A stretch of DNA of 64,000 bases. Origin: Obrimoposthia wandeli. Its lineage: Eukaryota. Made by a program: the position numbers and the translations under genes. A model generated the notes under the pieces. The model saw only the letters and a program-made list of their open reading frames with translations. It made no database searches and was not told the origin of the DNA. This document shows, one piece after another, positions 292 to 49,200 of this stretch. Numbering within the stretch: the first letter of the stretch is position 1; each line of letters begins with the position of its first letter. The stretch covers positions 1 through 64,000 of the forward strand of contig CDROCS010004528.1 in the NCBI GenBank assembly GCA_977020255.1. Reading direction: 5' to 3'.

Positions 292-1086
292 CTAACGAGA
301 AATTTTTAATTTCGAAAGTAGACCTTGTTTGGTTAACCATTCAAAAACAGTAGGAGTCAAAAGCTCTAATGTTGGAGTAGACCAGGGGGCATCTAGTTCT
401 TTTAAAAATTTGGCAACACCTTCAGGTAGGTCTGAGGTATCCATTTCCCCTCGTAATGTAACCAACTGTTTTTTTAAAGAATTTAGAGAGGAAACTAAAT
501 CAGAGTTAACATCTTTTGAGACTTTCTTGGCATCAAAACTGGCTATCAGGCTGTTATATTTTTGATAAGTCGCTTTTTTACCAAGACTGCTTTGCTGCTC
601 TAAAACGACTTCTTCTACAACAAAGTCATTCTCTAAATGATTTAACCACTGGTCCCAATACTTATCATTTAAATCGTTAATTGCTTTTGTAAGATTTCTC
701 AATGCAACAATTGAATTATTTAACGAATCATCCTGTTGTGCTTTATATTGTAATTCTCTCCATTTTTCAATAAAAATAGAAGTAGACTCTTTAGCACTTT
801 CTAATAAAATTTTAACATCATCACCTAGAGTTAATCCTGATGACTCACCAATTAAAAACCCGTCACTTTTATCTTTTCCTATGCGCGGAATTAACTGCGC
901 ATCTAGTTCACTAATAAGAGGCATAACATTGAATTTCTTCTTATTCCTGGAAAGCTCTGCTAAAGATTTATTTAAACGATTTAATATATCAGAGCTTGCC
1001 TTTATGATCGTTTCATTTTCATGAACATTAGAAGATGATTTTATTTGGCTTTGAAATTGCTTAACCTGAGTTTTTAATGTGCTCAT
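292..1086 (-). CDS. dpdI: DpdI-like protein, 264 aa, intact
   Basis: Size and position between dpdH and dpdJ; ATGA start/stop overlap with dpdH at 1083-1086. Assigned mainly by synteny. Confidence 0.6.
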   Translation of the reverse strand: MSTLKTQVKQFQSQIKSSSNVHENETIIKASSDILNRLNKSLAELSRNKKKFNVMPLISELDAQLIPRIGKDKSDGFLIGESSGLTLGDDVKILLESAKESTSIFIEKWRELQYKAQQDDSLNNSIVALRNLTKAINDLNDKYWDQWLNHLENDFVVEEVVLEQQSSLGKKATYQKYNSLIASFDAKKVSKDVNSDLVSSLNSLKKQLVTLRGEMDTSDLPEGVAKFLKELDAPWSTPTLELLTPTVFEWLTKQGLLSKLKISR

Positions 1087-4000
1087 AAAACCACCTCGGT
1101 TACGTGCTCACTGAACTCATCTAGGGCCACTTCGATAGAAATTAAAGAACCATCTATTTCATTATTAATTTTATCTACTTGTTGCATGCTGGCTGTATCA
1201 TTAACCTTCATTATTTTTGGAAGTACACTAATATTAAATTGTTGCCAATTTTTTAATACTTTACACACGCCTTTGATAACTTCTCCATCCAATAATGAAA
1301 GGATTTCTAGTTGAGCTAACTCATCCTTTGCTGTTAATAGTTTGATACTATTTTTAATATCTCTCCATTTGCAATTATCTACAACTACTTTGATATCTTT
1401 ACTTAAAGTAGGCCTTGCAACAAAGTCTTTAGGATAGAGTCCCATGTCAAAAATAGATTTATAAATATACTTAACACCCTCTAACATATTGATAAGATCT
1501 TCTTTATTGTCACAATCACTAAGGTGACTATTCATCAACTCAATGTCAGGTTTTAATTCTTGAACAGCTTCGTTTTTTAGGCGTTTTTCATCCTTTGACA
1601 ACACTTCTTGAGTCAACTTCTTAGATTTGTTAATTGCTATTTTGAAGTTGTCATTATCAATACCTGCGGGGCATCCATCCATCTGTTTTTTAAAGGATAT
1701 AATTTTCATCCATATTTTCTGGTTAAAATCCCATTGGCTTAATAACTCTTCTCTAAATTGTTTGTATTTATCATTTATTGATGGAGGCAGTCGATTAACA
1801 ATCTGGGAGGACTTTTTAATTAAAGTTTTTTGAAGGTTTCCATCAATCTTTAAACCTAAACCTTTCATTAATAGTATTTGCTTGGCAACTGATTCAACTA
1901 AGTATTCTTTTTGAATTTTCTTAACTGCTCCTTTTATTACTTTTGGAACCCAAATTTCCGAAAATTTTGTATAAAAAATAAAATCCTCATATCCATCCTT
2001 GTAATTCCAATTTTTAGTACCTTCATTTTTATTGTTATTAAAATATCTTAAGATGGCTACCGCTGAGCGCTGAAAGAAAATTTTTGTTTTATCATCTATC
2101 AAATCTTCTTCTTTGCAAAAGTACTCCTGACAACCTGATGGGTTATGCAAAGAATGTGGCAACTCAATCAAATACCTTTGCCCTTGCCTTAAGTGATACC
2201 TCAAAAAGCACAAATTACCTTTTATTTCAAAACCTTCGAATTAGGGAACCAAACTAATCTCTGATGGTCTATAATTCAAGACCATATCGAATAACTGTTT
2301 TCTTAAATTATTTCCTGAACTTTGAGATATTGGCTCGACTCCATTAAACCAATTGGTGATTTCTTTAATCACTTGATCTTCTTTATGACTAGGTAGCTTA
2401 GAATTTATAGGTGACTCAAAAGAGGGGGAGTCTGGTTGCTCATTTACATTAACTTCTATATCAGATGAAAGTTGTTGTGCAAAATCATTTAACGAAAAAG
2501 CTAAAGCCAACTGACTATTTAGTGTCTGCTGAACTGCTTTTAAATCAATGCCATCTGACCAAACAGTTGATAAAACTCTTGCTTGTTGAGGTGACTCTAA
2601 TCTAACTGTATTAATATCCGAATCTAAAGAAATTCTATTTTCTTTTATACTTAAATTTACTGGAAACTTACCAAGTGCGAAATCATCCCTATGGTCCCTA
2701 AGTAAATTTAATAATATTTCGTTGATCACATCTCTTGGATTAAATACAACTTCTTTATCGTCATTAGAACAGTACCACTTCGCCAACTTTTTGATTGCTG
2801 ATTGATTGTAAGGAAACAACGGAATCCCTAAGGATGACTCGCCAAAAGCATTTAATTTTTCAGAGTCCTGTTCAGATAGTTCGCCTTTCCATACAGGTAA
2901 ACTTTCATTTTTTTGATCTAATTTAATCTCAACACTTAGTTGAGACTTCCCAAACCTAGATGCATTCAAGTATCGGCTACAAAAATCAACAATTCTTTTT
3001 TCAATATTTTTTGAATTGTCATTACTTTCTTCAATTTTCCACTCTATTCTAGCCCTGGATAAGATGGTGTCCTTTCTTCTTTTCGTAGCCTGCATAGCCT
3101 CTTGTTACCGCGATAACAGATCTCAACACGCAAAGCTCTTCTTGGCGTTCTTCCAAAAGGCAATCAATTAAGACTTTCTCAATGGCAGAGATAGCAGCCA
3201 TATCTTCAACTAAAATAACGAGTGTTCTACCTAACTGCTTAAGGTGTTTTCGAATTTCTTTAAATAAATCTTGAAAATTTCCACTATTAAATTGAAAAAG
3301 CCTTTGAAAAGCAGTTTGAGTCGCTGCTCCAATAGACCTTTGGCTAATCATATTAACGGCTTTTTGTCTTTGTATATGATTTCCTAACCCTAAAGCATTG
3401 ATCGCATTCCTAGCAGGAAGGGACAAGTCATCTAGTTCGATTTTTTCAAGCATCGATTCAAAATCATCTAGACTAAGTTCGTAAACGGTATCATATAATT
3501 TTTTATCACTAACTCCCCTTATCCACCTAGTAGCAATATTGTAAATACAGCCTTTTTCATTCAATAATTCCAATTGAAACTGAACATCATTAAGTAAATT
3601 GGGCAGATTCTTCGCGAAACTAACTCTCTCGCATAATGCTATATATGTATCCTTATCCGGTCTTTGAGAATAGCTCTTTAACTCACTCTCTAATGATAGC
3701 TATGTCCAACCCTTAAGGACATAAACGTTACAAAAAAGATCGGCATATTTTCTTTTCAATGAGTCGCCTACTTCATCTACCTTTAGCCTGGCTTGCTCAA
3801 AAACATCACCATTTAAATCTTCTAATATGAGGTGTAAAGTCTGTCTTAAGCTAGAGTTTTTGGGTAAGCGGACAATTTTCCATTTATCTTTAATGACGAC
3901 ATTTTGTATTTTTAACTTGGCATGTAACCACCTAATCAAATGTGACTTACCTACACCTGCCTCACCAACAATCGGTATTGGTCTTTCAACTTCCATTAAG

Positions 4001-4171
4001 TGATTTAATATCTCAGTTTCAGATGCTTTACTCGGCTCATCATTTTGAGGAGATTTGCTATGCATAGGATCATGAACTGCAAGCAAAGCATGATCCGACA
4101 ACTCTTCTGCTTCAGTTTTAATACCACAATCTAAGATTATTTCGGTTGGGGCTGCAACTTGATGAACTCAT
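1083..4171 (-). pseudogene. dpdH: DpdH-like P-loop ATPase (~1030 aa), frameshifted into at least 5 pieces
   Basis: Reconstructed N-terminus ...IKTEAEELSDHALLAVHDPM, Walker A GEAGVGKSHLIRWL, Walker B-like LVILVEDM. ATG at 4171 overlaps the dpdG stop (ATGA). ORF pieces are 3700-4101, 3049-3573, 2241-3095 and 1083-2213. Confidence 0.75.
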
Positions 4172-5131
4172 TTTTTACCTCCAACCAATTCTATATGACT
4201 GATTTCTTCTGTTTTATTATTAGCTAATTGAATTGTGACTGAATCTAAAGAATCCGACCGCTTATCAAGAAATATTTCTCCTCTAATTTTAGACGGTATA
4301 GAGCATGGCTAAGACTTTTAGATACAAGGTAATCTGGAGAAGGTTCCCAATCATTTTTTTTAGTTTGCATCAATTCTTCAACTTTTACCCTATATTCTCC
4401 TCCATCAAATATAGGGATTTTTTTATTCAAATTAACAATAAAATTTTAATACTATTACCTCTGAAGGATCCTCCAAATTACCTTTCTTTTCAAAAACAAA
4501 TCACTAAACATGACTTAATTAATCTTGTCGGATCTACAAGGTATCGATCGTTACTGATTTTTTCTATGTAGCCAAGTAACAGGCCAAATTCTAGAAAATT
4601 AGAGGCGTCAGAGGAGTTTATTGACAATCTTGTTTGATCATCAGTTTGATGGGGCATATATCTATCATTCGACAATGCAAGTTCAGTAGAAGATAAGTAT
4701 TCTCCTCCAAATGAGTGTTTATCTAAAGCTAAAAACGTGCACATCGCTCTGATAAGTGGTTCAATATCATTTCCTGTTAAAATATCATATTTTCGGTTAA
4801 ATATTGTGCGCACTATTCGTTCGGCAAGGTTTGAATCATTAGATAATACTGATATTGCTTTTATCCCATCAACAGACTCCTCCCATAACCCAACCTTAGA
4901 CCAAAACTTTATAGTTCCAGGCAATTTGCTTTGAGGGTTAACATGAAATTCCAATACACCTTCATCATTGTCTGTATCTTTTTCAAATAAATTATCAGGT
5001 GCATTTTCTTCTAAAATTGACTCTACAGAATAGAAACTATCATCTTTTTTAATTCTTCTGTTCAACAATTTATCAACAAATATTAATGATGGGATATGTC
5101 CCTGGTGACTTGCACTATTTATTACAGACAC
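4168..5131 (-). pseudogene. dpdG: DpdG-like protein (~320 aa), frameshifted
   Basis: GTG start at 5131 (MSVINSAS); pieces 4490-5131 and 4245-4430 plus a final frame ...LDKRSDSLDSVTIQ...SHIELVGGKK ending at TGA 4168. Synteny between dpdF and dpdH. Confidence 0.65.
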
Positions 5132-7645
5132 GTATTTTTCTCCACGATTTTATTGAAATTAACTAGTGGAATCGATTTGTTATTTTCTTGCCACCACAGA
5201 CGGTAATCATTTAATTTATTTTTTTTATTGCGCTCAGCTATAAAAAAAGTTACTTGCTCTTCTAACGATGGAATGACCACTCTTGAATCACCAAGAGAAG
5301 CTATATTTAGAGACGGCCAATTATTTAACTTTTCAGATAAATCTTGAGAGATCCAAAATGAACTAAATCCTCTAGGGAGTTTTTTTTGAATTTTTCTTAA
5401 AAAATTTAAATCACCTTTAACTGAATATATATATTTATTTTCCAACATTTTTTTTACTAGTTTGGCCCACTGTAATTCATAAACAAGTTCTTTAGTTCCA
5501 TCGTAATAAACACTACAAACGTTATCAAAAGAAATATATTCACTTAATGATGATGGTAATAAATGACCTGAACTATAATTATCAACAGAAACACCATCAC
5601 CTAATGAAGGTAAAAACTGTCACATATCATACAACCTCCGCATGCTCTTTGAGGGCTATACCCATTTACTATGTAGTACTTCACTAACTCTTTGCAAATA
5701 GGTTTTTCAAGAGACGTTATATTTTCAGATAAAGTTAAAAAACCATGCTCCTGAGTCTTAATTTCATTTTTTCGATGTTCCTGAATATTAGTTTCCCAAT
5801 ACAAATTAGATAGTGATTGTTCATTAATAATTTGAACGAGAACTTTGTTGTTATATCCTTCCAATATTCTTTTCGTGTTTAGTATTTTTTTCAAAATCAA
5901 TAAATCCATTCTCATCTTCAATTTTTGGCACATCATAAAAAATTCTAATTGAACCAGCCCGTTGCATGAGCAGAAGTGTTAGCCAATTCCAATTTTTATT
6001 TCGATCACTTTTCTTATGAAGACCATCATGATAGAACGAAGTATCCAGTTGGTATAGATCACCTCGTAGTGTTGGATGGGAAGATATATTAACCTTTCTA
6101 TCCCACATTCCTTTCCATTTTTTATAGCCTAACTCTGTAGAAATTAAAATTTCATTGTTTATCTTTCTTGCACTATTTAATTGACTGTTATGATAAACCA
6201 CTTCTGAGGTAGCAGCCTTTCCGTCTCTTCCTGCTCGGCCAATCTCTTGATAATAGCGATCGATATTATCTGGAATACAAGCGTGAATAACACTTTTCAC
6301 ATTCGGCTTATCCATCCCTACGCCAAAGGCCGAGGTGGCAATAATTATATCTAAATCATCTTTTTGCCAATTCTCAATTATCTTCTTTCTAGAACGTATA
6401 TCAGTTTTACCGTTAAACAGGGCAATCCGATTTATTCCTATAGCTTTCAGACTACAACTTAAGTCAACAGAATCCTGAACTAATGTTGTATATAATATCA
6501 GTGGTTTGGGTAAAGCTATCACTCGTTCTACAACTGATTGAAGATAACTATTCTCATCTTCATTTTTATACGATGAACTAACCTCTGGTCGTAAAAAATT
6601 TCCATTAACAACAATTGGGTCACTATTGGGCTCACAGTACAAAGTAGTCAACGAATTTATATTACTTTGAGTGAAAGTTGCCGACATAGTTGTTTTTAAA
6701 AGGTGAGTTGCTTACTTGCCTTAAAGACGCAACCAAAGCGCCAAAACGTTGAAATTCTGAGCGAAAATTACTCCCCCATGTGTCAATTAAATGTGCTTCA
6801 TCGATTATGATATTCGCAATAGAGTTTCGCTTAGCTAATCTAAATAATAAAGGTAGTAGACTTCCAGTAACTGATTCAGGAGAAGTAAAAATTATTTTTT
6901 GCTTACCATTGTCAATATTATCCCTAATTTCAGACTTTTCACCATCAGACAACTGTCCATGCCAAGCATAGTTTAGAACAGAATCACTATCCGCTTTTTC
7001 AAGTAATTCTTTTGCTCTGTTACCTTGCTCTATAGCCAAACCGACAGTAGGAACAATAACTATTGTAAGCGCTTTACTTTTACTAAATAACATACAGGCA
7101 TGAGCAACTAATGTTTTACCACAGCCAGTAGGTAGGTTAATAAAAAGGGTAGAATCTTGAGGACATGTTAAAGCTACTCTCACTGCCATTCTTTGGCCAA
7201 CACTGGAATAGTGGCTATAGCTTGGGTCTGATAACCTTGAAATTAAGGCTAAATCCATTTCAACCTTTTTCACTTTACGTTTTTGTTTCTGTTCGTACAC
7301 GTCAATTAGTTTTTGACTTACTACTGGAAATAAAAGGGTAAGGAGGTTTGAGCCAACTTGATAATTTAACATTGCTTTAGAACAGAGTATTTCCTCTTCA
7401 CTAGATAAACGTCTAGGTATTGGAAAGTTATTGTGCTGTATATCCAGGTCTTTTTGAGATGAGTATAAATAATCTTTAATTGATAAAAGCAAGTCTAATA
7501 AACTGGTTTTATCACCATAAACTACTTTTTTTAATCTCTGTGCAAAATGGTTATCTGGATAGTGGCTAATAATATTATCAACCGTCTGATGTAATTCAAC
7601 TATCTCAGCTCCTGAAAACAATGAGGAAATAATTAAATTATTCAT
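5122..7645 (-). pseudogene. dpdF: DpdF-like RecQ-family helicase (~840 aa), frameshifted
   Basis: LPTGCGKT (motif I), IIDEAHLIDTWGSNFRSEF (RecQ motif II), ATSAFGVGMDKPNV, YYQEIGRAGRDG (motif VI), C-terminal CGGCMIC Zn motif. Pieces are 6662-7645, 5851-6687, 5601-5936 and 5122-5448. Confidence 0.8.
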
Positions 7646-10600
7646 TACGATTTGCCTACCAATGTAACAGACCTCATAGTAGATAAATTGATTCCAAACT
7701 CCTCAAGTGAAGATAAACCATATTGCTCACTAAGTTTATCTCTAGCTTTTTCTTTACTATTTGATGCTACGCTCAACACTAAATCTCGCCATTCATCTTT
7801 ACTTAAAAAATGAACAATCCGTATCCCACATTATCTTTTTTCTGCACCAGGGTTTATATTATAGTCCTGATATAAATTCTTATTAGCTGTTAAGGATTTA
7901 CCATATGGCAAAGCCAAAATATTCAAAAAAACTTTATCTTGAATTTCATTACCTAACTCATCTACCCAAACTTCTAACATCATAGGCTGAAGTTTTCTAT
8001 CATTATTCCGTTGACTAACTCTTGTGGGAAAATCATTTTCTAGTGTGCAAATCCAACTTAACTTAAATAAAGTTTTAGGCTCATCAAAAGTAATATTTAA
8101 CTTTGTCATTAATGCGGAAGTAAGAGGTCTACTTAACTCCCTTATAATGGCATTAGATATGCCTAACGTGCTTTGTTGTGAAAATGAATAAACAGTATCA
8201 ACAAAAGGTTGCCCATATCTAAATGGATATGAACCAGTTTTCGCACTTTGGTCTCTAGAAGCACTCATAGGTTTAGTAGAAGGGTTCCTTAGGCCACTAT
8301 CAAAGTCCATTCCTAAGATGCAATGACTTATGAAGTCATCTACATTTAATCGAGTTCGCCCTAATTTGTATTGAAAAACAAAGTTGCCATCCTCTGTCTT
8401 CCTAGAGTTAAATCTAAGACTATCGTTAATCCACCCTTGCATCTCTTTACTTACATCATCTGCATTTTCATCAACAATCCTTAACCTTTCTGAAAATGTT
8501 TTTATTTCAGAAAGATCAACTTGCATTCCATTCCATACTTCCTGATCTGCAACTTTCTTTCTTTCTTTTGTAACTAAACCGGATTCTCCTGCTATATCTT
8601 CTGATAGTTTGTTTAATTGTGTATACCCCTGACGAATAATACTTTCACAATAAGATTCTATCTTCTCATCCAATACCAATTGAATACTTGAGCAGTTTTG
8701 GTTAAAAACACCTATATCTGTTTTTAGTAACTGAGCCCAAAAACTATAAAACCCCTCACGACAAGGAGTAAGCACTAAGTTCTCAACAGGCAGAACCCCT
8801 GTGCTACTTGCACTGTATCTATTTAAACGACCGATTCTTTGTTCAATTCTCATCACCGTTCTAGGTGTAAACTATAATGAACAGCTAGACGACATTTCCC
8901 TTTGTAGGTTTAGACCATCCTCTCCGATTGATCACATATGAACATTAAATTTTGAGGTAATAGTGAAAGCTAAACCTTTTCCATCTGGTGTGCCTTTCAA
9001 CTGAAGGCAAGTGGTGTTCTAAAAACTTATAGACATTATCAGCTACAGCTTTATCCCCACAAAAAACGACAATTTTACCGTCCTTGTTTTTCCTTTCAGC
9101 CATGCTGTAATCTCTTCCAGTAACAATTCATCTTTATTTGATTGCTCAACATGACCCATTTCAATCATAGTGGTCAGAATCAGCTTTTCTTCATCTGTAA
9201 TGTTATTATCAGATGCCAAGACAGTCTGTGCTTTAACTACAAGTGAAGAGGGGGATATAAGTAAAGCATCTAACCATTGGAAATAATTTTCATATGTAAC
9301 CCCTAAAAAGTCATGTTCCCATGCATTAAGCTATTGGTGGTAATCGTCTAATTGCTCATCTAATGAAACAAACTATTACCTATCTTCTTCCAAGTTGCTA
9401 TCCTACAATCAATTACTCTTAATCCTGGAAATATTTGCTCGATATAGCTATTTTTACTTCCTCTTCTGTTTCTGATAAAGCGCTGGAATAGTCTATACTT
9501 ATCCCCAAAGTAATCTTGTAATGCCTTTATCGCTAACTTACGCTGGTTTTCATCTTTTTCTTCGGAGAAGTAATCAATGTGAGGTTTGAGGATAGTGATT
9601 AGCAAATCTAATTCATCATCATTGAAATCAAAACTTTCTATTTGCTCTACTGTCCCCTCCAGCGTGAAATCATCACTTTCTGGCATTAGTGCACCATATA
9701 TTCCTGAGTATTTTTCTCTTTCTTCAATCTTGTTATTAAATGATGCTATTCCATCATCATTTAATTTATAAGAATCAGGATTCAAGCAATGCAGCATAGC
9801 CAAGAAGTTTTGGTATTCCCTGTTATGGGCGTACCTGAAAGAACAATGATTGTCGATATTGAGTGATGACAAGCAGATGCTATTTGTTCAAATATAATTT
9901 TATCTTCTTTTCCCCAAGCAAATTCTCCCAACTGATGACCTTCATCTATAACAACCATTGTAGGTTTTTTAGTAATGAATTTTGTTGTCAAAACATCTTG
10001 GAAACTTCCTATAAAGACTTTTTGATCTTCTTCATCAAGATCCCCATCCATTACATCTTCCAAATGAAATTTTTGACTCATTTCATCCAGCCATTGCTGA
10101 ACAAGAGAAGGAGGGGTTAAAATGAGAACACAAGCCTTGTCTGTATATTCTAATATATGTTCACGAACTAGAAATCCAGCTTCAATAGTTTTACCTAACC
10201 CGACTTCATCACCAAGAAGGTACTTTTGTACATTATCATTCAATACTTGCAGAACTACGGATAGTTGATGTATTTCTAAATTAACGGCACTACTGGGGAT
10301 GGAGGATATTGAAGCACAAGATGCTCGCTGATTTATGTAAGATTTAAAAAATGCCCCTCGATCATTGATGTATGAAGGAGCAGTAGTTGCTCTTCCGGCG
10401 AGATAACTTGCAGGGCAAAATTGATATTCATTATTCAAGTTGGGGACAAATATTTCATTCATTGTTACAACATCAGAATCCTCATAATTGTACTTAATAA
10501 GATGTTCATCATTTGGCCTCTGCCCATCATAAAACCCCGCTCTCCAATTTTGAGACCTCCCTACCCTGCAATAAACTAAAGTTTGTTCATATAATTTTTC

Positions 10601-10771
10601 TTTTCCTATTAGCTCGGTGCCAGAAACTTCAATTTGATTGGAAAGCGGAGATAGTGGAGAAGTAAAGAATCCAATTAGAGCAGTCTTTTTTTCACTCGAA
10701 ACGGAAACAATCTTACCTATGCCCTTAAATGCAGTTTTACTTTCTACTAGAGAACCTTGAACTAACCTCAT
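7645..10771 (-). pseudogene. dpdE: DpdE-like SNF2-family helicase (~1040 aa), frameshifted with one in-frame TAG
   Basis: LGDEVGLGKTIEAG (motif I), VVIDEGHQ (II), LSGTP (III), EQRIGRLNR (VI). The last frame ends ...TMRSVTLVGKS with a TAATG overlap onto the dpdF start at 7645. Confidence 0.8.
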
Positions 10772-11754: not shown

Positions 11755-13220
11755 TTATGACCCGTCTTTGTAATTTCTAACTAGATAACCGTGATAATTA
11801 GGCTTTAAGTAAAGCTCAATTATTTTTGGGGGCTCAATGTTAGGAAAAACAGGCAGTCTTCCATGTTTCTTCGAAACCAGCTTTTTCTTGCTTTTTTCGC
11901 AAAGAACCTTTTTGATAGTTCTAAACGCTCTCTCAGACATTAAATTCGTTGCTTCTTTGGTAGTAGGCAGAACTCCTCCGTAGACACTTGTTAGCCAATC
12001 TATAGATTGCAGAGCTATTTTCTTCACACTCCAGATACTCGCATACACGTATTTTGATTCTCTAGATGGCAAAAGTTGAAACTCATTCATAAGTTTTATT
12101 ATAGATCTGGTTTTCATTGCATTATACGCCGAGCCTGCTTCTTCCTCTGATCCTAGGTAACATTCCAACTCTCCTTTGGTAGGCATAAAACCTAATTTCC
12201 CTGCTTCTATGCAAATTTTCTTAAGCATAGATTTGTTATATGTACCTCGTGGCTTTCTATAAAATTCTGTATATGGTGACTTTTCAAATTCGCATCTTGT
12301 GAGATACTTTCTTAATTTTCTTTGTATAAGTTTTTTGCCAGCTTTGTAAATGTCATTCGCATATAAAATCAACACTCTCTTACCATCATTCTTGGCAGCT
12401 GTTTCTTTCTCATGAAGATTTTTTTTATACTTTCTTTCTTTGCTATCTTGGCACACACGATCCCTATTCATATACCCGGCGACTTCAATAATAAATCTAT
12501 CAGATACAGTAAAATCAACAGTATGTCGTCCGGGCCAACTTTTAACGATATCATTTAAATACACTTGCTTTCTAACCGATTTTTGGTACTTATCTAGTCC
12601 TAATACTTCTTTCAAATGAGTATCAACTATATACTCAAGTTCACTATCATAACGCTCTCCACTTGGTGCAAGATACCCAACATCGATTTCAATCTTGAGC
12701 GAGTCGAAAAATTTAGCGGATCCCCCGAATTTACGGTTGATTGAATCATATAATCCTGCATCACCCCTCTAAGCTTACTCAATGATAGTGGAGAACTACC
12801 TATGGAAGTTGATTGATTACCAAGTTTTTTATCATTAACTTCCAACCTTGATATGTACTCCAGTAATTCTGTGCAATAAATACTAATTTGTTTAATTTTA
12901 TTCTTCATGCTTAAATTTTGATACCTTGTATCGCTTCCGGTATCTCTAACAGTGAGGTCCCCTCTTGCCCTTTCACTTCCAGAATATTGCAGGCCTAGCC
13001 TTAATGCTAATTGCCTCATACTATCAATGCCAAGCTTCCGTAAATGGTTAATATAAGTTTCCCCGCAAGGACACCCCTTAGAAGCACTCATCTTCCATAC
13101 CTCATCATGACTGGGTACTGTAATATCATCTGAAACATAGCCTAGCGCCGGACGGATTTTGTCTACTAATAAGTTACCCATATCAAGAACTGAGTGACTA
13201 GATATCATGTAACCTGTCAT
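11755..13220 (-). pseudogene. Single ~490-aa PD-(D/E)XK-like nuclease with helical repeats, split by a 1-bp frameshift
   Basis: The frame of ORF 11755-12615 extends upstream without a stop (DAGLYDSINRKFGG...GYLAPSGERYDSELEY) to a CCCC run at 12764-12767, where adding one base joins it to ORF 12627-13220. Catalytic-like motif VDFTVSDRFIIEVAGY. Confidence 0.6.
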
Positions 13221-13694: not shown

Positions 13695-15593
13695 TTAGAG
13701 CATTGTTTCAATATGTAAGGCCTTCCAGCCCCACTGAGATCGTTTTTTATTGTAGTTAAGAATCGCTTTCCCTGACACCCAATCTCCATTCTGGAGACTA
13801 TGAGCTTTCACTATAGGTGGAGGAATAAAGACTCCGTCATCAGTAAATCCCATACCGTTATCTTCTCTTACGTTGCCTTCAAATGCCTTTAATATTGATT
13901 CAGGTACCGGTTGGTTTGTCTTTTGGGCAGTTAACGTTCGGTAACCAGTTCCTTGTTTGCTTGTGTATTTTGAAACGCGAACTGTAATGGCGTCGCCTTC
14001 AATGAATTTATCTTGTAAATCTGTAAATCTAACGACTCCATCTATGTCACGACTAATGATGAAATGGATAAGGTTCTTTTGCGAATTAATATGATCTACA
14101 ACGCCGATATGTTCATCGAATATGTCCCACTCGGTCGAACCATCTCTTTTATCCATGGTATAAACTTGGAAGCGACTTTCACTATCGTACTCCCCTTTTA
14201 TCTTTACCCCTATTCCTGGCTCCGCACCCGAAATTGAAACCTTAGATTCAGGAATGGAAACTTCAAAAGGGACAGGTGAAGAGTGAATATAAAGCTTCCG
14301 TCTTGGTTTATTTGGCTTAGTATCTATCGTGAAGCATTCGCCAAGAACCCCATCTGTCCAAGGAATATTACAGTATAAAAGTTCTTCAGCGACAGAAGCA
14401 TGACTTCTATAAAATTTTATATTGGATGTTGTAGATGAAGTTTCTTCATACCAAGCTTGGCTCTTCAGCGATTCGACTGAGTCAGGAATTTTCTGATTGT
14501 TATCAACTCGATATTTAATTATTTCATTAATTTCAAACTTTGCTCGAGCTAAGTCTTGAGTTTTGATTAATAACTCAGCAAGTTTAATTTTTACTTTACT
14601 AACGAAATTGATATCTTTTGAACAAAGCAGGGCTTTACAATAACAAGACAAGGTGGCGTTTAGGGTAATTGATACGTGTATATCCCCCAATAACTCCCAC
14701 GCCCAATAGTCATTGGCTTTGCTCTTGACCACTTCTAACCCAAACGAAAGGGCTTCTTCATTTCGTCCAGTTGTCATCAGAATCCTGGCCTTACTAAGTT
14801 TCAGCCAGATATTGTCTGGGAATTTGCTAATGCATTCGTTGATGAAAGGTAAAATATAGTCCAGGTCTTCTTGGGCGTTTCGTAAGAATGCGTCTTTACT
14901 TGCGTGATTAACCACTTTTTCAGCAAGTGAAGGGTAGGTATCACCATCGCTAGTTCTAAAGGGTTCATAATCTTCGGGACGAAGGTTTTCGAGCCCCCAG
15001 ATTCTCGCGAAAGCTCCCATATTGAGCTTGCCTTCTTTTGCCAGTTTATCAGCAACTTGAAGAAAGCAGGTGTGTAATAGGGATGGCTTTTCTACTTGAA
15101 GTTTAAAATAGTCATTTAAATATCTTTTAGCTCCATTAAAATTTGGGGGTTCCTGATCAGCCATTGATTTAGCAAGGCGATATAACTCCCAAGCTAAACC
15201 TGTTTGAACATCTTCAGAATAATCACCGCTATTTAGCATTGCCTTAAAAAGGTTAGCCGATTCTTGATGTCGACCTTCCTTGCTTAAAGTTTTAGCCTTG
15301 AGAATATTCTGACCGTTCAGGTTACATAATTTAAGTGTAGACTGGCGTTGATCACATAATATATTGTCTGATGGATCGATTTTTAAATGTTCAAGCTGTT
15401 GAGAATAGTGCGGTAGATTTTGTTGCTCTCCTGATTTAGCCTCGCGCTTGATCAGGTCGATAATACACCAAGCAAACGCTTTGATATCCCAGTCGTCTCC
15501 TTGTGAATTTTTAATTAACTCAACAGCCATTTGATAGGCTTCATCTAAGGAGCCTTCCTTCCTTTTTGCAAAAACGTCTTTGTTAGTAATCAC
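13695..15593 (-). CDS. TPR-like helical repeat protein with C-terminal S1/cold-shock-like OB folds (632 aa)
   Basis: Likely start is GTG at 15593 (ITNKDVFAKRKEG), overlapping the helicase TGA (GTGA) with a GAGGGG RBS. TPR-like segments (AWELYRLAK, YWAWELLGDI, YCKALLC). OB-like ends include GVVDHINSQKNLIHF and GFTDDGVFIPPPIV...WGWKA. Confidence 0.85.
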   Translation of the reverse strand: MITNKDVFAKRKEGSLDEAYQMAVELIKNSQGDDWDIKAFAWCIIDLIKREAKSGEQQNLPHYSQQLEHLKIDPSDNILCDQRQSTLKLCNLNGQNILKAKTLSKEGRHQESANLFKAMLNSGDYSEDVQTGLAWELYRLAKSMADQEPPNFNGAKRYLNDYFKLQVEKPSLLHTCFLQVADKLAKEGKLNMGAFARIWGLENLRPEDYEPFRTSDGDTYPSLAEKVVNHASKDAFLRNAQEDLDYILPFINECISKFPDNIWLKLSKARILMTTGRNEEALSFGLEVVKSKANDYWAWELLGDIHVSITLNATLSCYCKALLCSKDINFVSKVKIKLAELLIKTQDLARAKFEINEIIKYRVDNNQKIPDSVESLKSQAWYEETSSTTSNIKFYRSHASVAEELLYCNIPWTDGVLGECFTIDTKPNKPRRKLYIHSSPVPFEVSIPESKVSISGAEPGIGVKIKGEYDSESRFQVYTMDKRDGSTEWDIFDEHIGVVDHINSQKNLIHFIISRDIDGVVRFTDLQDKFIEGDAITVRVSKYTSKQGTGYRTLTAQKTNQPVPESILKAFEGNVREDNGMGFTDDGVFIPPPIVKAHSLQNGDWVSGKAILNYNKKRSQWGWKALHIETML

Positions 15594-18436
15594 GAGCTTA
15601 GCCCCTCTGTTACCAAAGCTTGTACATTTTCCGATAGGGTGTTTGAAGTACATGCATTGGGAACTCGTGTGCATTTAGTGAATTGATTTTTTCCGTTATA
15701 AAAAACATCAAAAACAGCACTTTCGAAAGATTGTACGAAAGTATAACGCTGAGTCCAATTCATTGATTCTACGTTGTTTATAATAATACCTTGTTGCTCA
15801 GCCAAGGTAGAAAGCCTTTTATGGAAATCATTCAAGAACTCCTCTTCAAACTCAAAGTTAATGGATGAGCTCGGTATAACTGGCACAATAATAAAGCCGC
15901 TTAGTGGGGAGAGCAGATTGAGAATTTCCCCACTAAACTCTGTTTGCTCCGGAGTAGAAATTCTTGATATTTTTCTTTTGCCGTTATAACCAATAGTGAT
16001 TCGAGATGCTTCACTTTCTTTCTGAAAGAAATAGACTTCCTGATATTGACCCTGGCTAACATCTTTGATGTTTATGCCAGATTTTTCAGTAAGTTTCCTG
16101 ACACGCTTTAAAATATCCAAAGAAAAATAAGCGTTCGATGGAATTCCAAACGATTCATTGCGATTATTTATCTCCGCATATCCATCAGTTTGCTTTGAAG
16201 TATATCCATTGCTAGGAGTCGTCGGCGTATGATTATGATTGGATGAAATAAAATCACTATTACTTACGATGCCAGGCGATGCAACCATCTTTATACCTGA
16301 GCCAAGCTTAATGGCAGGGGGGTCTAATAGGTAAAGCTTGTCTGAAGTACGTGTTATTGCCGTATAGAACCATCTGAAATAATCAGCAGATAGCTGGCTC
16401 TGGTGTGTTTTGCATTTAACAAAGACATGATTCCATTCACTACCTTGAGCTTTATGACAAGTTATTGCATAACCAAATTTCAAGCGAAGTGCATTAAAGT
16501 AAGGATCTGACCTCAAGGTATCTTTGAACTCTAGGCTCCCTGATTTTAAATGAGAATGACGAATACAAAAGTCTAAGTATAGGGCTTTAGTTTCATCAGA
16601 GGTGAGGCCTGGGTGTCCGCTATATAATAGACCTTCCAGAATTTTCGTTTGAAAAAAATGAGACTGACCTTTCAGGTCTTTGAATCCAACAATTAGCTCC
16701 CTAAACGCCAACGTAATTGGTGTTTCTTCAATCTCTTTTGTTTCAGGGTTTTTTCTACGCAGTGTTATATTTCGGCGCTCAGTATTACCTAATACTTCTT
16801 TGACGAGGCCAAAATCTCCGTTTGAAATAAAGAAACCATAGATATAGCTATTACTGACAGCCATTACCTTGTCGCCTCTAGTAACTTCTTCGATGTTAGG
16901 AAAGAAATGTTCTCTTATGAGCCGATTGTAGGCTGCCACATCAGAATTGGAATGTGCCAGAACTATTGATTCACCATTAATTTTTCCACTACAAGAGTTA
17001 AGGTAACTAGTCAAAAGGGCTTGATGAGACACTTCCTCTAAATCAGTATAATTCAAATCTATAACCAGTTGATTGAATATGCCGTTATTCAAAAGATTTT
17101 CTGAGGTTTATAAATTATGCATTACACCACTATCGACCCTTTGGCGTACGACTTCTTTTAGTTCACAGCTAACGCTTTTAACTAAATGCGTTCTCTCTGT
17201 AAAGGTATTTATCGTCAAGTGCAGGAAGAAACTCATACCAACAGGTGGTAGTTGAGCGTCATCGCCAATGAAAATAATTTTTTTCCTATGGTCATTATGA
17301 TCAAGATTGACGTACTTGAAAAAGTCACGTAGCAAATACCCAGAACCAAAACGAAAGAACTCTTCTTCATGATAAATATCTGCAATCATTGATGCTTCAT
17401 CGACAATAAACACCGTATCTGCTGACATTTCATTAACTGCCAACTGAGCATAAAACTTGTAAGTTTCTGAACCATCTAGATTGTCATCACGATACTCTGC
17501 AATATCTTTGAAAGAATAGATCGTTTTGTGAATGGTGTAAGCCGAAGATTGAGTTTTTTTAGCAATAACTTTTGAAGCTTTTCCAGTAGGCGCAGCTAGT
17601 ACATAATTACGCCCAATTGCTCTAAAATATTCAGTTAGGCCTTTAGTTATAAATGTCTTACCAGTACCCGCATAACCTTTTAATAAGAATACTTGGTCAA
17701 CTTTACTATCTAAAAAGTCACCCAGATTATTTACTAATTCTGCCTGCCCGTTAGTGAGGCTGTATTCAGAAAAAGCGTCGTGTAATTTGATGAGCTCGCG
17801 AGTGCTTTCAGGAGCTAAATCAAACGAAGAGGCGGCATTTGATGATGCATCCCTAAATCTTTGAAGTTTCGATTCATCTAATGATTTTTTTAATTCATCA
17901 GCCTGGTTTTGTACGATTCTCTCTGATTCCTCGAGCTTTGCTAACTCCTCTTTGACGTTCAGTAACTGAACTTCCAGCAGTTTATTTTCTTCGTTTAACG
18001 CATGAGGAGAAACATCTTGATACTCAGGTTCTATATAAGCTGGATACTCAGAAAATATGGCTCCACTGTAGGTTTTAAAAAGCCACTGACCTATTAAATA
18101 GGCGTCACGTAGTAATGCTGATGCATCTTTTGAATCGATGTTCCGTCCATGGGCTGCTTTATTACCCAGCATGCGAATTGCGTGAAGCTTTTCTAGGATG
18201 TTCTCATCGATTATTTCGATAAAGTCATTTGATTTAAGTTTTTCAAAGAACCCATCATTCTTCTCGCTTGGTAAATTAAGTTCTCGAAATAAAATTCCAA
18301 CTAGCAGTTCAGCAAAACAGCGCAACTTTATTATTGATGTATGTGCGTCTGTACACACGTATTGTTCAGCAAAATTGGCATGTTCATATAATTGTGGCCA
18401 ACGTTCCTGCAAAGGTTGAAAATTAGTTGATCCCAT
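15590..18436 (-). pseudogene. DUF4145/HEPN-like domain + SF1B (RecD-like) helicase + two TBP-like repeats (~945 aa), frameshifted near 17100-17230
   Basis: LHAIRMLGNKAAHG (RxxxNxxxH), LKGYAGTGKT, FIVDEASMI, IGDDAQLPPVG, FGYAITCHKAQGSEW, YTAITR. C-terminal duplicated unit with YNGK. The pieces 17108-18436 and 15590-17092 rejoin as ...VMHNSINLRKSLNNGIFNQL. Confidence 0.85.
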
Positions 18437-18511: not shown

Positions 18512-18929
18512 TTATTGTAGTGTCGATATTTGTAATGTTAGGGGAATTTGCATCCAAACCGCACTCAGTATTATTAGATCAAGACTAACTTCAAGTTTAG
18601 TTGTACTGTTCAAGGAGGGTAAATAGTCATCTAACCATTTTTACGTTCAGATTTTTAGTAGCTGTACGGCCAATACTTGCCAGCTCTTTGGCTGGTTCAA
18701 CGGCAAAAACTTTAATATTGTTTTTATCTGAATGTGTTTTGGCTGCTAATTTTGCTAAATATCTAGTATCTCGGCCAGACCCAGAGCCTAAATCCTGAAT
18801 ACGGGTATTTGTTTTTTTTAGAATTGAAGGCAATAATTTAGACCAGCCTTGGTAAACCTCTTCAATTGATTTTGAAAGGTATTTCCGGGCTAGCTCTTTT
18901 GCATTTTCATTATAAAATTGAAGAGTCAC
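18512..18929 (-). pseudogene. Class I SAM-dependent methyltransferase, frameshifted and C-terminally truncated
   Basis: QDLGSGSGRD motif I and AVEPA. Removing one A near 18640 restores WLDDYLPSL...DLIILSAVWMQIP. The reading then ends at TAA 18512, well short of a full domain. Confidence 0.7.
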
Positions 18930-49194: not shown

Positions 49195-49200
49195 ACGCCG

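What the first reader, a model, noticed from the sequence alone, without database searches (positions are those of the whole stretch)
13695..18436. Candidate two-gene anti-phage system: HEPN-like/SF1B helicase/TBP-like protein coupled to a TPR-OB protein
Seen: two minus-strand genes joined by a GTGA stop/start overlap (15590-15593) inside a defence island. Gene 1, once rejoined across small indels, has an N-terminal RxxxNxxxH motif, all the core SF1B helicase motifs and a duplicated C-terminal domain. Gene 2 has TPR-like repeats and about three OB-like folds. Established: DUF4145 is HEPN-related, HEPN domains are often RNases in abortive-infection systems, and S1/CSD OB folds bind single-stranded nucleic acid. 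Inference: the TPR-OB protein senses phage nucleic acid or protein and licenses the helicase-RNase effector. From memory the architecture matches computationally defined TOTE (TPR, OB, TBP, Effector) conflict systems; I cannot confirm that match here and know of no experimental characterisation.
Basis: partly seen in the sequence, partly recalled or inferred. Interest (0 to 1): 0.85.

Follow-up and report, generated by a model that had tools for sequence, protein, structure and literature searches.

The report
Broken TOTE (PDC-M16) candidate phage-defence pair
The two genes are a typical member of the TOTE / PADLOC PDC-M16 family, which has been predicted by computer to defend bacteria against phages but never tested, and in this assembly the effector gene is interrupted, so it is a correct but not novel find.

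Summary
Two minus-strand genes at 13695-18436 share a GTGA stop/start overlap.

- **Gene 1 (about 947 aa):** DUF4145/HEPN domain with invariant R88-N92-H96, a coiled coil, a RecD2/Pif1-like SF1B helicase, and two TBP-TOTE domains.
- **Gene 2 (632 aa):** a TPR/DUF7017 solenoid followed by three small beta-barrels. Two are clear S1/cold-shock folds.

Pfam's TOTE-specific models and PADLOC's PDC-M16A/B models all hit far above threshold. I found no experimental paper.

The pair is conserved:
- Gene 1 lies directly upstream of gene 2 in all 34 genome loci that have upstream DNA.
- The 4-bp overlap is present in 26 of 32 loci.
- The two genes co-diverge (rho about 0.9).
- Neighbours in other genomes are defence genes, and here the neighbour is a fragmented Dpd system.

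As assembled, gene 1 is broken. Four small indels within 140 bp form two frame-restoring pairs. They scramble invariant helicase residues and create an in-frame TAA at 17108-17110. No public read data cover that patch, so I cannot separate a recent real inactivation from a local assembly error.

The contig comes from an Oceanospirillaceae-like bacterium within a 1.35-Gb multi-organism assembly. The mechanism (nucleic-acid sensing coupled to a helicase and HEPN RNase) remains inference.

The parts
15590..18436 (-). Gene 1 (TOTE effector / PDC-M16A), about 947 codons in one frame, interrupted by an in-frame TAA
   Evidence: tblastn with intact 947-949 aa orthologues gives one HSP, 77% identity, same frame throughout. 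PADLOC PDLC04472 covers profile positions 1-433 and 442-928 of 930.
18110..18370 (-). DUF4145 / HEPN domain (residues 23-109); the R88-N92-H96 motif lies at 18149-18175
   Evidence: Pfam PF13643, 33.6 bits against a cut-off of 23.1. R88, N92 and H96 are invariant in 20 orthologues. N-terminal 189 aa resemble the N-terminus of the HsdR model PRK11448, E 1e-28, well below that model's curated cut-off.
17654..17677 (-). Walker A (G254-T261) of the SF1B helicase
   Evidence: AAA_30 81 bits, AAA_19 and PIF1. RecD2 TIGR01448, E 2e-24, well below that model's curated cut-off. Invariant GYAGTGKT.
17183..17227 (-). Out-of-frame patch 1: a 1-bp deletion then a 4-bp insertion relative to five orthologues. 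It replaces the invariant S404-P405-A406 and Y412-L413.
   Evidence: Three-frame translation and DNA alignment; conservation table.
17091..17113 (-). Out-of-frame patch 2: a 1-bp deletion then a 1-bp insertion in a T run. It contains the in-frame TAA at 17108-17110 and replaces the invariant R446.
   Evidence: No short-read contig covers 17044-17371, and no run was listed for 17050-17270.
16325..16474 (-). UvrD_C_2 / RecD-type helicase C-terminal motifs
   Evidence: Pfam PF13538, 65 bits. Weak PDB match to RecD2 3e1s.
15614..16126 (-). Two tandem TBP-TOTE (TATA-binding-protein-like) domains
   Evidence: PF22721, 137 bits, two stretches. Six-frame hits at 15902-16126 and 15614-15844.
15590..15593 (-). 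GTGA overlap: stop of gene 1 and start of gene 2
   Evidence: Sequence. The same 4-bp overlap is present in 26 of 32 loci.
13695..15593 (-). Gene 2 (TOTE TPR-OB protein / PDC-M16B), 632 aa, intact
   Evidence: PADLOC PDLC04488, E 1e-275, profile positions 1-630 of 634. 76% identical to the best homologue and keeps all 76 invariant columns of the 23-sequence alignment.
14373..15593 (-). TPR-like alpha-solenoid (residues 1-407), including DUF7017 at 14388-14810
   Evidence: DUF7017 153 bits, TPR_19 31.7 bits. The AF2 model is all helical hairpins. Foldseek matches are TPR/PPR proteins such as Ski3, OGT and IFIT1.
14148..14357 (-). First five-stranded beta-barrel (residues 413-482), OB-like, with no Pfam model
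   Evidence: AF2 model. Weak single-domain match, Z 6.2. Triple cold-shock-domain arrays (Unr CSD456/789) align over the whole 225 aa at Foldseek E about 2e-5.
13938..14129 (-). S1CSD-TOTE-1 OB fold (residues 489-552)
   Evidence: PF22708, 76 bits. Cold-shock domain matches at Z 8.1-8.2, rmsd 2.0-3.0.
13710..13889 (-). S1CSD-TOTE-2 OB fold (residues 569-628)
   Evidence: PF22707, 84 bits. Rho RNA-binding domain 1a62, Z 9.3, rmsd 2.0, 62 residues aligned.

Best explanation
The locus is a two-gene TOTE (TPR, OB, TBP, Effector) conflict system, the same thing as PADLOC candidate system PDC-M16. It sits in a decaying defence island of an Oceanospirillaceae-like bacterium.

**Shown**
- Gene 1 fuses a DUF4145-type HEPN domain, a coiled coil, a RecD2/Pif1-like SF1B helicase and two TBP-like domains.
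- Gene 2 is a TPR solenoid followed by three small beta-barrels, two of them S1/cold-shock folds.
- The two genes are translationally coupled, always adjacent, co-diverging, horizontally mobile, and found next to other defence genes.
- As assembled, gene 1 is interrupted by two frame-restoring indel pairs and a TAA. This copy is therefore probably inactive; I put the odds at about 55:45 that the lesion is real and recent rather than a local assembly error.

**Inferred mechanism for intact members**
1. The TPR-OB protein and the TBP-like saddle together recognise an invader-derived nucleic acid or nucleoprotein. The OB folds would bind single strands and the TBP-like domains duplex or hybrid.
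2. The SF1B motor loads and translocates 5'-3'.
3. The HEPN domains, brought together through the coiled coil, cleave RNA. This stops phage growth and possibly host growth too, as in abortive infection.

Distant relatives lack the HEPN domain but keep helicase-TBP plus TPR-OB. The helicase-TBP/TPR-OB pair is therefore the core, and HEPN is an added effector.
For: **Family assignment**
- PF22721 TBP-TOTE 137 bits, PF22708 76 bits, PF22707 84 bits and DUF7017 153 bits (cut-offs of these four 27-27.5); DUF4145 33.6 bits against 23.1.
- PADLOC PDC-M16A E 1e-189/1e-195 and PDC-M16B E 1e-275.
- TOTE is defined in the literature as TPR, OB, TBP, Effector.

**Intact orthologue pairs**
- 947-949 aa plus 633-638 aa, with the same overlap.

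**Conservation**
- Gene 1 lies directly upstream in 34 of 34 genome loci that have upstream DNA.
- The overlap is kept in 26 of 32 loci.
- Identity of gene 2 tracks that of both halves of gene 1, Spearman 0.88 and 0.92, n = 25.
- Hosts span Gamma-, Alpha-, Beta- and Deltaproteobacteria, Actinomycetota, Chloroflexota, Bacteroidota and large plasmids.

**Defence context**
- Here: a fragmented Dpd system.
- Elsewhere: PDC-S37, ZacC, Hhe, ZorD, MkoA, DrmD, BrxH and AriA; type III-A CRISPR and R-M systems.

**Structure**
- AF2 model pLDDT 91.6; OB matches at Z 8.2-9.3.

**Effector role of gene 1**
- It is also disrupted in 3 of 31 other genomes while gene 2 stays intact.
- The HEPN domain is absent in a distant member.

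**Lesion**
-.
Against: - No experiment on any TOTE/PDC-M16 member was found, so the defence role rests on guilt by association.
- No evidence here that the two proteins bind each other; the one complex prediction gave no verdict.
- HEPN catalysis is unproven. The R-to-H spacing (R-x7-H, with N in between) is wider than the canonical Rx4-6H, and I did not fold the domain.
- Whether the lesion is real is undecided. 221 of 228 near-invariant gene 1 positions are kept, and six of the seven changes lie inside the two patches. That fits a very recent event or an artefact equally well. The patch also coincides with the only large gap in short-read contig cover.
- The family is essentially absent from phage collections, which neither supports nor contradicts a defence role.
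Confidence: 0.78

Rival explanations
1. The system is intact and active in the organism. On this reading the four indels are a local consensus error in a low-coverage patch of a long-read multi-organism assembly.
For: - All four indels lie within 140 bp, alternate in sign and restore the frame. The remaining 4.6 kb of the pair has no lesion.
- Outside the patches, only one of 222 near-invariant positions differs, and that change is conservative (K433R).
- The lesion lies inside the one long stretch (17044-17371) with no short-read contig support. Everywhere that is covered, the contigs agree with the window.
- No run holding the lesion-bearing words was listed.
- Short-read depth for this organism is only about 3x.
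Against: - One change is a 4-bp insertion, and only one of the four sites is a homopolymer run.
- The 44-kb housekeeping part of the same contig is about 85% coding with ORFs up to 1617 aa. A generally error-prone consensus is therefore excluded.
- The adjacent Dpd genes carry many stops and frameshifts, so the island is decaying.
- Gene 1 is independently broken in three other genomes, one of them a complete genome.
Confidence: 0.4
2. The pair is not an anti-phage system. It would instead be a selfish addiction (toxin-antitoxin-like) module or a nucleic-acid-processing module of mobile elements, found in islands only because it is mobile.
For: - Patchy, horizontally transferred distribution, including large conjugative or mobilizable plasmids.
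- The putative toxic gene is recurrently inactivated while its partner survives.
- No experimental proof of defence was found.
Against: - Neighbours in unrelated genomes are repeatedly bona fide defence genes: Zorya ZorD, Mokosh MkoA, Hhe, DISARM/BREX helicases, PARIS AriA, CRISPR type III and R-M systems.
- Independent curators (Pfam/Aravind and PADLOC) both classed it as conflict/defence.
- At 947 and 632 aa with multiple sensor-type domains, it is unlike a simple TA pair.
Confidence: 0.1
3. This is a previously unrecognised kind of defence system that matches no described family. This is the high-novelty reading implied by the first reader's score.
For: None once the databases were searched. 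The only point in its favour is that no experimental study exists.
Against: - Family-specific Pfam models named for TOTE, and PADLOC PDC-M16A/B models of matching length (930 and 634 positions), hit end to end.
- Hundreds of homologues with the same architecture exist: 575 at E<=1e-5 in the word-indexed search, and 444 50%-identity clusters at E<=1e-30.
Confidence: 0.02

Closest known systems
[quoted passage not shown]
   Same: All four defining modules are present and hit the TOTE-specific Pfam models. The layout is two genes, with the TBP domain fused to the effector protein and TPR+OB in the partner.
   Different: Nothing architectural. This copy has an interrupted effector gene. I could not read the original paper, so its detailed predictions are not compared.
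PADLOC phage defence candidate PDC-M16 (models PDLC04472 = M16A, PDLC04488 = M16B)
   Same: End-to-end matches to both component models, with the genes adjacent and in the same order.
   Different: PDC-M16A matches in two pieces because of the in-frame stop. PDC systems are candidates, not validated systems.
[quoted passage not shown]
   Same: Shares the TPR-cold-shock-domain protein and TBP-like protein modules.
   Different: TALON has a YprA-family SF2 helicase with an inactivated RNase H domain and a NERD nuclease. Here the helicase is SF1B (RecD2/Pif1-like) and the added effector is HEPN. No YprA or NERD is present.
DUF4145-type HEPN domains at the N-terminus of type I restriction HsdR-like proteins (PRK11448) and in Abi systems (PMC3710099)
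   Same: The N-terminal 189 aa align to the PRK11448 N-terminus (E 1e-28, well below that model's curated cut-off). DUF4145 is a HEPN family with a mostly conserved R...H motif, often fused to helicases and nucleases in defence contexts.
   Different: Here it is fused to an SF1B helicase and TBP-like domains rather than to an SF2 HsdR motor. RNase activity of this subfamily is untested.
SF1 helicase-based defence proteins (AbiO/Nhi; RecD-like type IV accessory helicases)
   Same: Weak PADLOC similarity in the helicase core: AbiO and Nhi E about 1e-6, typeIV_RecD E 3e-18.
   Different: There is no TBP or TPR-OB partner in those systems. The similarity is limited to the generic helicase core.

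Membership tests
TOTE conflict system | TPR-repeat module | tested here: met
   TPR_19 31.7 bits (cut-off 25) and DUF7017 153 bits. The AF2 solenoid matches TPR proteins.
TOTE conflict system | OB (S1/cold-shock-like) domains fused to the TPR protein | tested here: met
   PF22708 76 bits and PF22707 84 bits, cut-off 27. Structural matches to CSD and the Rho OB fold, Z 8.2-9.3.
TOTE conflict system | TBP-like (TATA-binding-protein fold) domain | tested here: met
   PF22721 137 bits, two tandem copies. The fold itself was not modelled here.
TOTE conflict system | Effector domain linked to the TBP module | tested here: met
   DUF4145/HEPN plus SF1B helicase in the same polypeptide. Enzymatic activity is not testable here.
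TOTE conflict system | Conserved operonic linkage of the two components | tested here: met
   34 of 34 loci with upstream DNA; 4-bp overlap in 26 of 32; co-divergence rho 0.88-0.92.
PADLOC PDC-M16 | Adjacent genes matching the PDC-M16A and PDC-M16B models | tested here: met
   PDLC04472 E 1e-189 and 1e-195 (two pieces); PDLC04488 E 1e-275. PADLOC's own system-level rules were not run.
HEPN superfamily (DUF4145 family) | Conserved R...H catalytic motif in the C-terminal helix of a four-helix domain | tested here: inconclusive
   R88, N92 and H96 are invariant, and the Pfam DUF4145 hit is above its cut-off. The spacing is R-x7-H, the domain was not folded, and the only PDB sequence match is a non-significant hit to AbiV (E 0.015).
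SF1B (RecD2/Pif1-like) helicase | Walker A, motif II DExx, motif III GDxxQLPP, motifs IV-VI | tested here: met
   AAA_30, AAA_19, PIF1 and UvrD_C_2; the top NCBIfam helicase model is RecD2, E 2e-24, well below its curated cut-off; invariant motifs retained. In this copy the segment between motifs III and IV is scrambled.
TALON | YprA-family helicase and NERD nuclease | tested here: not met
   No YprA, DEAD, DUF1998 or NERD hit in either gene.
Experimentally validated anti-phage system | Demonstrated protection against phage | not testable with these tools
   No paper on TOTE, PDC-M16, DUF7017 or TBP-TOTE function was found in the searchable library.

The most novel reading that the evidence does not exclude
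The four clustered indels are an assembly artefact, and the bacterium carries a working TOTE system. Members of this family would then be a mechanistically new kind of anti-phage immunity. A TBP-like saddle and a triple OB array would jointly read an invader nucleic-acid structure, and a 5'-3' SF1B motor would deliver or activate a HEPN RNase. The effector would be costly enough to be knocked out repeatedly in nature, as seen in 4 of 32 genomes here.
Probability: 0.25. Interest if true: 0.6.

Novelty: new member of a known kind. Interest (0 to 1): 0.35.

Why it matters
TOTE/PDC-M16 is a widespread family: 444 protein clusters at 50% identity with E<=1e-30, spread over many phyla and large plasmids. 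It is a candidate immune system that nobody appears to have tested.

Three observations from this work may help whoever tests it:
- The helicase-TBP plus TPR-OB pair is the conserved core, and HEPN is an add-on.
- The partner protein carries three beta-barrels, one more than the two Pfam models describe.
- The effector gene is recurrently inactivated while the partner stays intact, which suggests the effector is toxic or costly.

This particular locus adds little. It is an ordinary and probably dead copy, and intact orthologues from cultured strains are better material for experiments.

Tried and rejected
- **Complex prediction** of gene 2 with the TBP-like region of gene 1 gave no verdict (score 0.01). 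It is evidence neither for nor against binding.
- **Read support for the lesion.** Short-read contigs of the only holder run match the window exactly where they lie, but leave 17044-17371 uncovered. A second run search on 17050-17270 listed none.
- **Second copy in the assembly.** A DNA search of the whole assembly for a second or strain-variant copy found only the window's own.
- **The genome search 'relatives'** is not available for this assembly.
- **Rfam and tRNA scans** of the window found nothing.
- **Promoter and terminator consensus scans** gave no more sites than shuffled sequence. One sigma-70-like site, at 18541-18514, lies upstream of gene 1.
- **Viral collections.** The viral contig scan found no relatives. 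The phage collection gave one weak partial hit.
- **PDB sequence searches.** They found no solved relative of gene 2. For the helicase there was only a weak RecD2 match. For the HEPN profile there was a non-significant AbiV hit.
- **The original TOTE paper** (PubMed 35609893) is not held.
- **Programmed frameshifting or readthrough** at the lesion was rejected. All 28 intact orthologues encode a single uninterrupted ORF, and the shifted patches destroy invariant residues.
- **A eukaryotic (horizontally transferred) origin** was rejected. The 80-kb contig is densely bacterial, and the assembly holds many Mb-size bacterial-looking contigs.

Full report
**What is in the sequence**

On the minus strand, one reading frame runs from the ATG at 18436 to the TGA at 15590-15592. 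It is cut into ORFs of 442 and 500 codons by a TAA at 17108-17110.

A second gene starts at the GTG at 15593 and ends at 13695 (632 codons). Base composition here (37-38% GC) is close to the rest of the contig. The first 12 kb are lower, at 32-35%.

**Domain content**

Gene 1 (Pfam):
- DUF4145 at residues 23-109 (33.6 bits; cut-off 23.1).
- AAA_30, AAA_19 and PIF1.
- UvrD_C_2.
- Two TBP-TOTE domains (137 bits).

NCBIfam places the helicase with RecD2, an SF1B helicase; that hit is well below the model's curated cut-off. It also shows that the first 189 residues resemble the N-terminus of an HsdR-type model (E 1e-28, also well below cut-off).

Gene 2:
- TPR_19.
- DUF7017 (153 bits).
- S1CSD-TOTE-1 (76 bits).
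- S1CSD-TOTE-2 (84 bits).

PADLOC gives end-to-end hits to the candidate system PDC-M16. PDC-M16A scores E 1e-189 and 1e-195 for the two pieces, joining at profile positions 433 and 442 of 930. PDC-M16B scores E 1e-275.

TOTE stands for TPR, OB, TBP, Effector. It was defined computationally by Aravind, Iyer and Burroughs (2022). I could confirm this only through its citation in PMC12458937, because the paper itself is not held. DUF4145 is a recognised HEPN family whose R...H motif is 'mostly conserved' (PMC3710099).

**Structure of gene 2**

An AF2 model built on a 23-sequence alignment is confident (pLDDT 91.6). Residues 1-407 are helical hairpins that match TPR/PPR proteins. They are followed by three five-stranded beta units.

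Modelled alone (pLDDT 92.5), the C-terminal 225 residues behave as follows:
- The last unit matches the Rho RNA-binding domain (Z 9.3, rmsd 2.0, 62 residues).
- The middle unit matches cold-shock and S1 domains (Z 8.1-8.2).
- The first unit has only a weak single-domain match (Z 6.2).
- The whole array aligns to triple cold-shock arrays of Unr (Foldseek E about 2e-5).

Two are secure and one is probable.

**The breaks in gene 1**

Intact orthologues of 947-949 aa align to the window in one HSP at 77% identity without a change of frame. Three-frame translation and a DNA alignment with five orthologues show two short patches where the conserved peptide sits in another frame.

- **Patch 1 (about 17183-17227).** It begins with a 1-bp deletion and ends with a 4-bp insertion. 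The main frame reads FFLHLTINTFTERTHL where orthologues have SPALDDKYLYREHN.
- **Patch 2 (about 17091-17113).** It begins with a 1-bp deletion and ends with one extra T in a T run. The main frame reads L-stop-TSENLLNN where orthologues have SINLRKSLKK.

Of 228 positions that are at least 96% conserved in 28 orthologues, the window differs at seven. Six of these lie in the two patches: S404, P405, A406, Y412, L413 and R446. The HEPN motif, Walker A and all other motifs are kept.

**Is the lesion real?**

I could not decide.

Points favouring an artefact:
- The four changes are clustered and restore the frame, and the rest of the pair is flawless.
- They fall in the one long stretch (17044-17371) without short-read contig cover. 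Covered parts agree exactly with the window, at about 3x depth.
- No run was listed for the patch itself.

Points favouring a real lesion:
- One change is 4 bp, and only one of the four sites is a homopolymer run.
- The 44-kb housekeeping part of the contig is about 85% coding, with intact ORFs up to 1617 aa.
- The neighbouring Dpd genes are riddled with stops and frameshifts. DpdE has six in-frame stops in 1.7 kb, and DpdH and DpdF are in pieces.
- Gene 1 is independently disrupted in three other genomes while gene 2 stays intact. These are an N-terminal loss in Aliiglaciecola lipolytica and frameshifts in Endozoicomonas atrinae and a complete Rhodobacteraceae genome.

I put the odds at about 55:45 for a real, recent inactivation.

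**Source organism**

The window is the first 64 kb of a 79.9-kb contig in an assembly of 1.35 Gb and 6912 contigs. That assembly also holds many Mb-size contigs with intact bacterial-type helicase genes, so it is a multi-organism (holobiont or metagenome-like) assembly.

The contig's PBP1C is 59-74% identical to proteins of Oceanospirillaceae, an Osedax symbiont and Aliamphritea.

**Conservation and context**

Gene 2 family size:
- 575 homologues at E<=1e-5 in the word-indexed search, the top 120 at 43-76% identity.
- 444 50%-identity clusters at E<=1e-30 in the exhaustive search.

In 39 genome loci from many phyla:
- Every locus with upstream DNA (34 of 34) has a TBP-TOTE-bearing helicase gene directly upstream.
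- The HEPN N-terminus is detected in 29 loci.
- The 4-bp overlap is kept in 26 of 32 loci.
- Identities of the two genes to the window co-vary (rho 0.88 and 0.92, n = 25). Shared ancestry inflates such correlations.

Neighbours of the pair in 21 other genomes include strong PADLOC hits to PDC-S37, ZacC, Hhe, ZorD, MkoA, DrmD/DrmA, BrxH and AriA.

Three distant members add to the picture:
- One lies beside a type III-A CRISPR-Cas locus, and its 731-aa gene 1 lacks HEPN.
- Two lie beside R-M genes.

Homologues occur on large plasmids, for example the roughly 330-kb Acinetobacter plasmids. They are essentially absent from phage collections.

In the window, the pair is flanked by the Dpd remnant at 1-10.8 kb, by two unassigned ORFs at 11755-13220, and by a methyltransferase fragment at 18627-18929.

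**Mechanism (inference)**

Modular logic points to a sensor-motor-effector machine:
- OB folds would bind single-stranded nucleic acid.
- A TBP-like pseudo-dimer would bind duplex or hybrid.
- TPR repeats would provide protein contacts.
- An SF1B 5'-3' motor would translocate.
- In this subfamily, a HEPN RNase would act as effector. It probably needs dimerisation, for which the coiled coil at residues about 150-215 is a candidate.

Recurrent loss of gene 1 alone fits a costly effector. None of this has been tested. The single complex prediction returned no verdict, and I found no experimental paper.

**Verdict**

The system is not novel as a kind, because Pfam and PADLOC already model exactly this architecture. 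This copy is probably inactive. Interest is moderate and attaches to the family rather than to this locus.

Noticed in passing
window 292-10771 (minus strand): A Dpd (7-deazaguanine DNA modification/restriction) gene set: DpdI, DpdH, DpdG, DpdF and DpdE. All are fragmented. DpdH is in at least 4 pieces, DpdF in at least 4, and DpdE in at least 3 with six in-frame stops in 7648-9372. The contig ends at window base 1, so dpdA-D, if present, would lie off the contig.
   Followed up: partly
window 11755-13220 (minus strand): Two consecutive ORFs (286 and 197 aa) separated by 11 bp, with no Pfam, PADLOC or NCBIfam match. Another first-stage note (s1-198779) reads them as one hidden PD-(D/E)XK-like nuclease gene. 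I did not test that.
   Followed up: partly
window 18627-18929 (minus strand): A 100-aa fragment of a SAM-dependent methyltransferase (weak TehB-like and PADLOC mad2 hits) lies between the TOTE pair and the housekeeping genes. It is probably another remnant of the island.
   Followed up: no
whole assembly G000 (e.g. contigs C506, C253, C361): The 1.35-Gb, 6912-contig assembly contains many contigs of 1-4 Mb with intact bacterial RecQ/DpdF-like ORFs. It therefore looks like a multi-organism (holobiont or metagenome) assembly rather than a single eukaryote genome with one contaminant.
   Followed up: no
L009:5938-8004, L014:5181-7998, L017:5184-7998: The TOTE effector gene is also disrupted in Aliiglaciecola lipolytica E3 (N-terminal 250 aa missing, plus an in-frame stop), in Rhodobacteraceae bacterium nBUS_22 (frameshift near 6952-6974) and in Endozoicomonas atrinae WP70 (frameshift near 6700-6713). 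The TPR-OB gene is intact in all three.
   Followed up: partly
L050:2802-11902: A distant TOTE pair (gene 2 30% identical) has a 731-aa helicase-TBP gene with no HEPN domain. It sits immediately upstream of a type III-A CRISPR-Cas effector operon (Cas6, Cas10, Csm2-4) and downstream of a WYL-domain gene.
   Followed up: no
window 46915-54054 (minus strand): An intact PBP1C (759 aa) and bacterial alpha-2-macroglobulin (1617 aa) gene pair. I used it here as evidence that the non-island part of the contig is well assembled.
   Followed up: partly
window 17376-17418: Short-read contigs 90-95% similar to the window end here with unrelated flanks (loose ends). They probably belong to other organisms' Pif1/RecD-like helicase genes in the same sample.
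   Followed up: no
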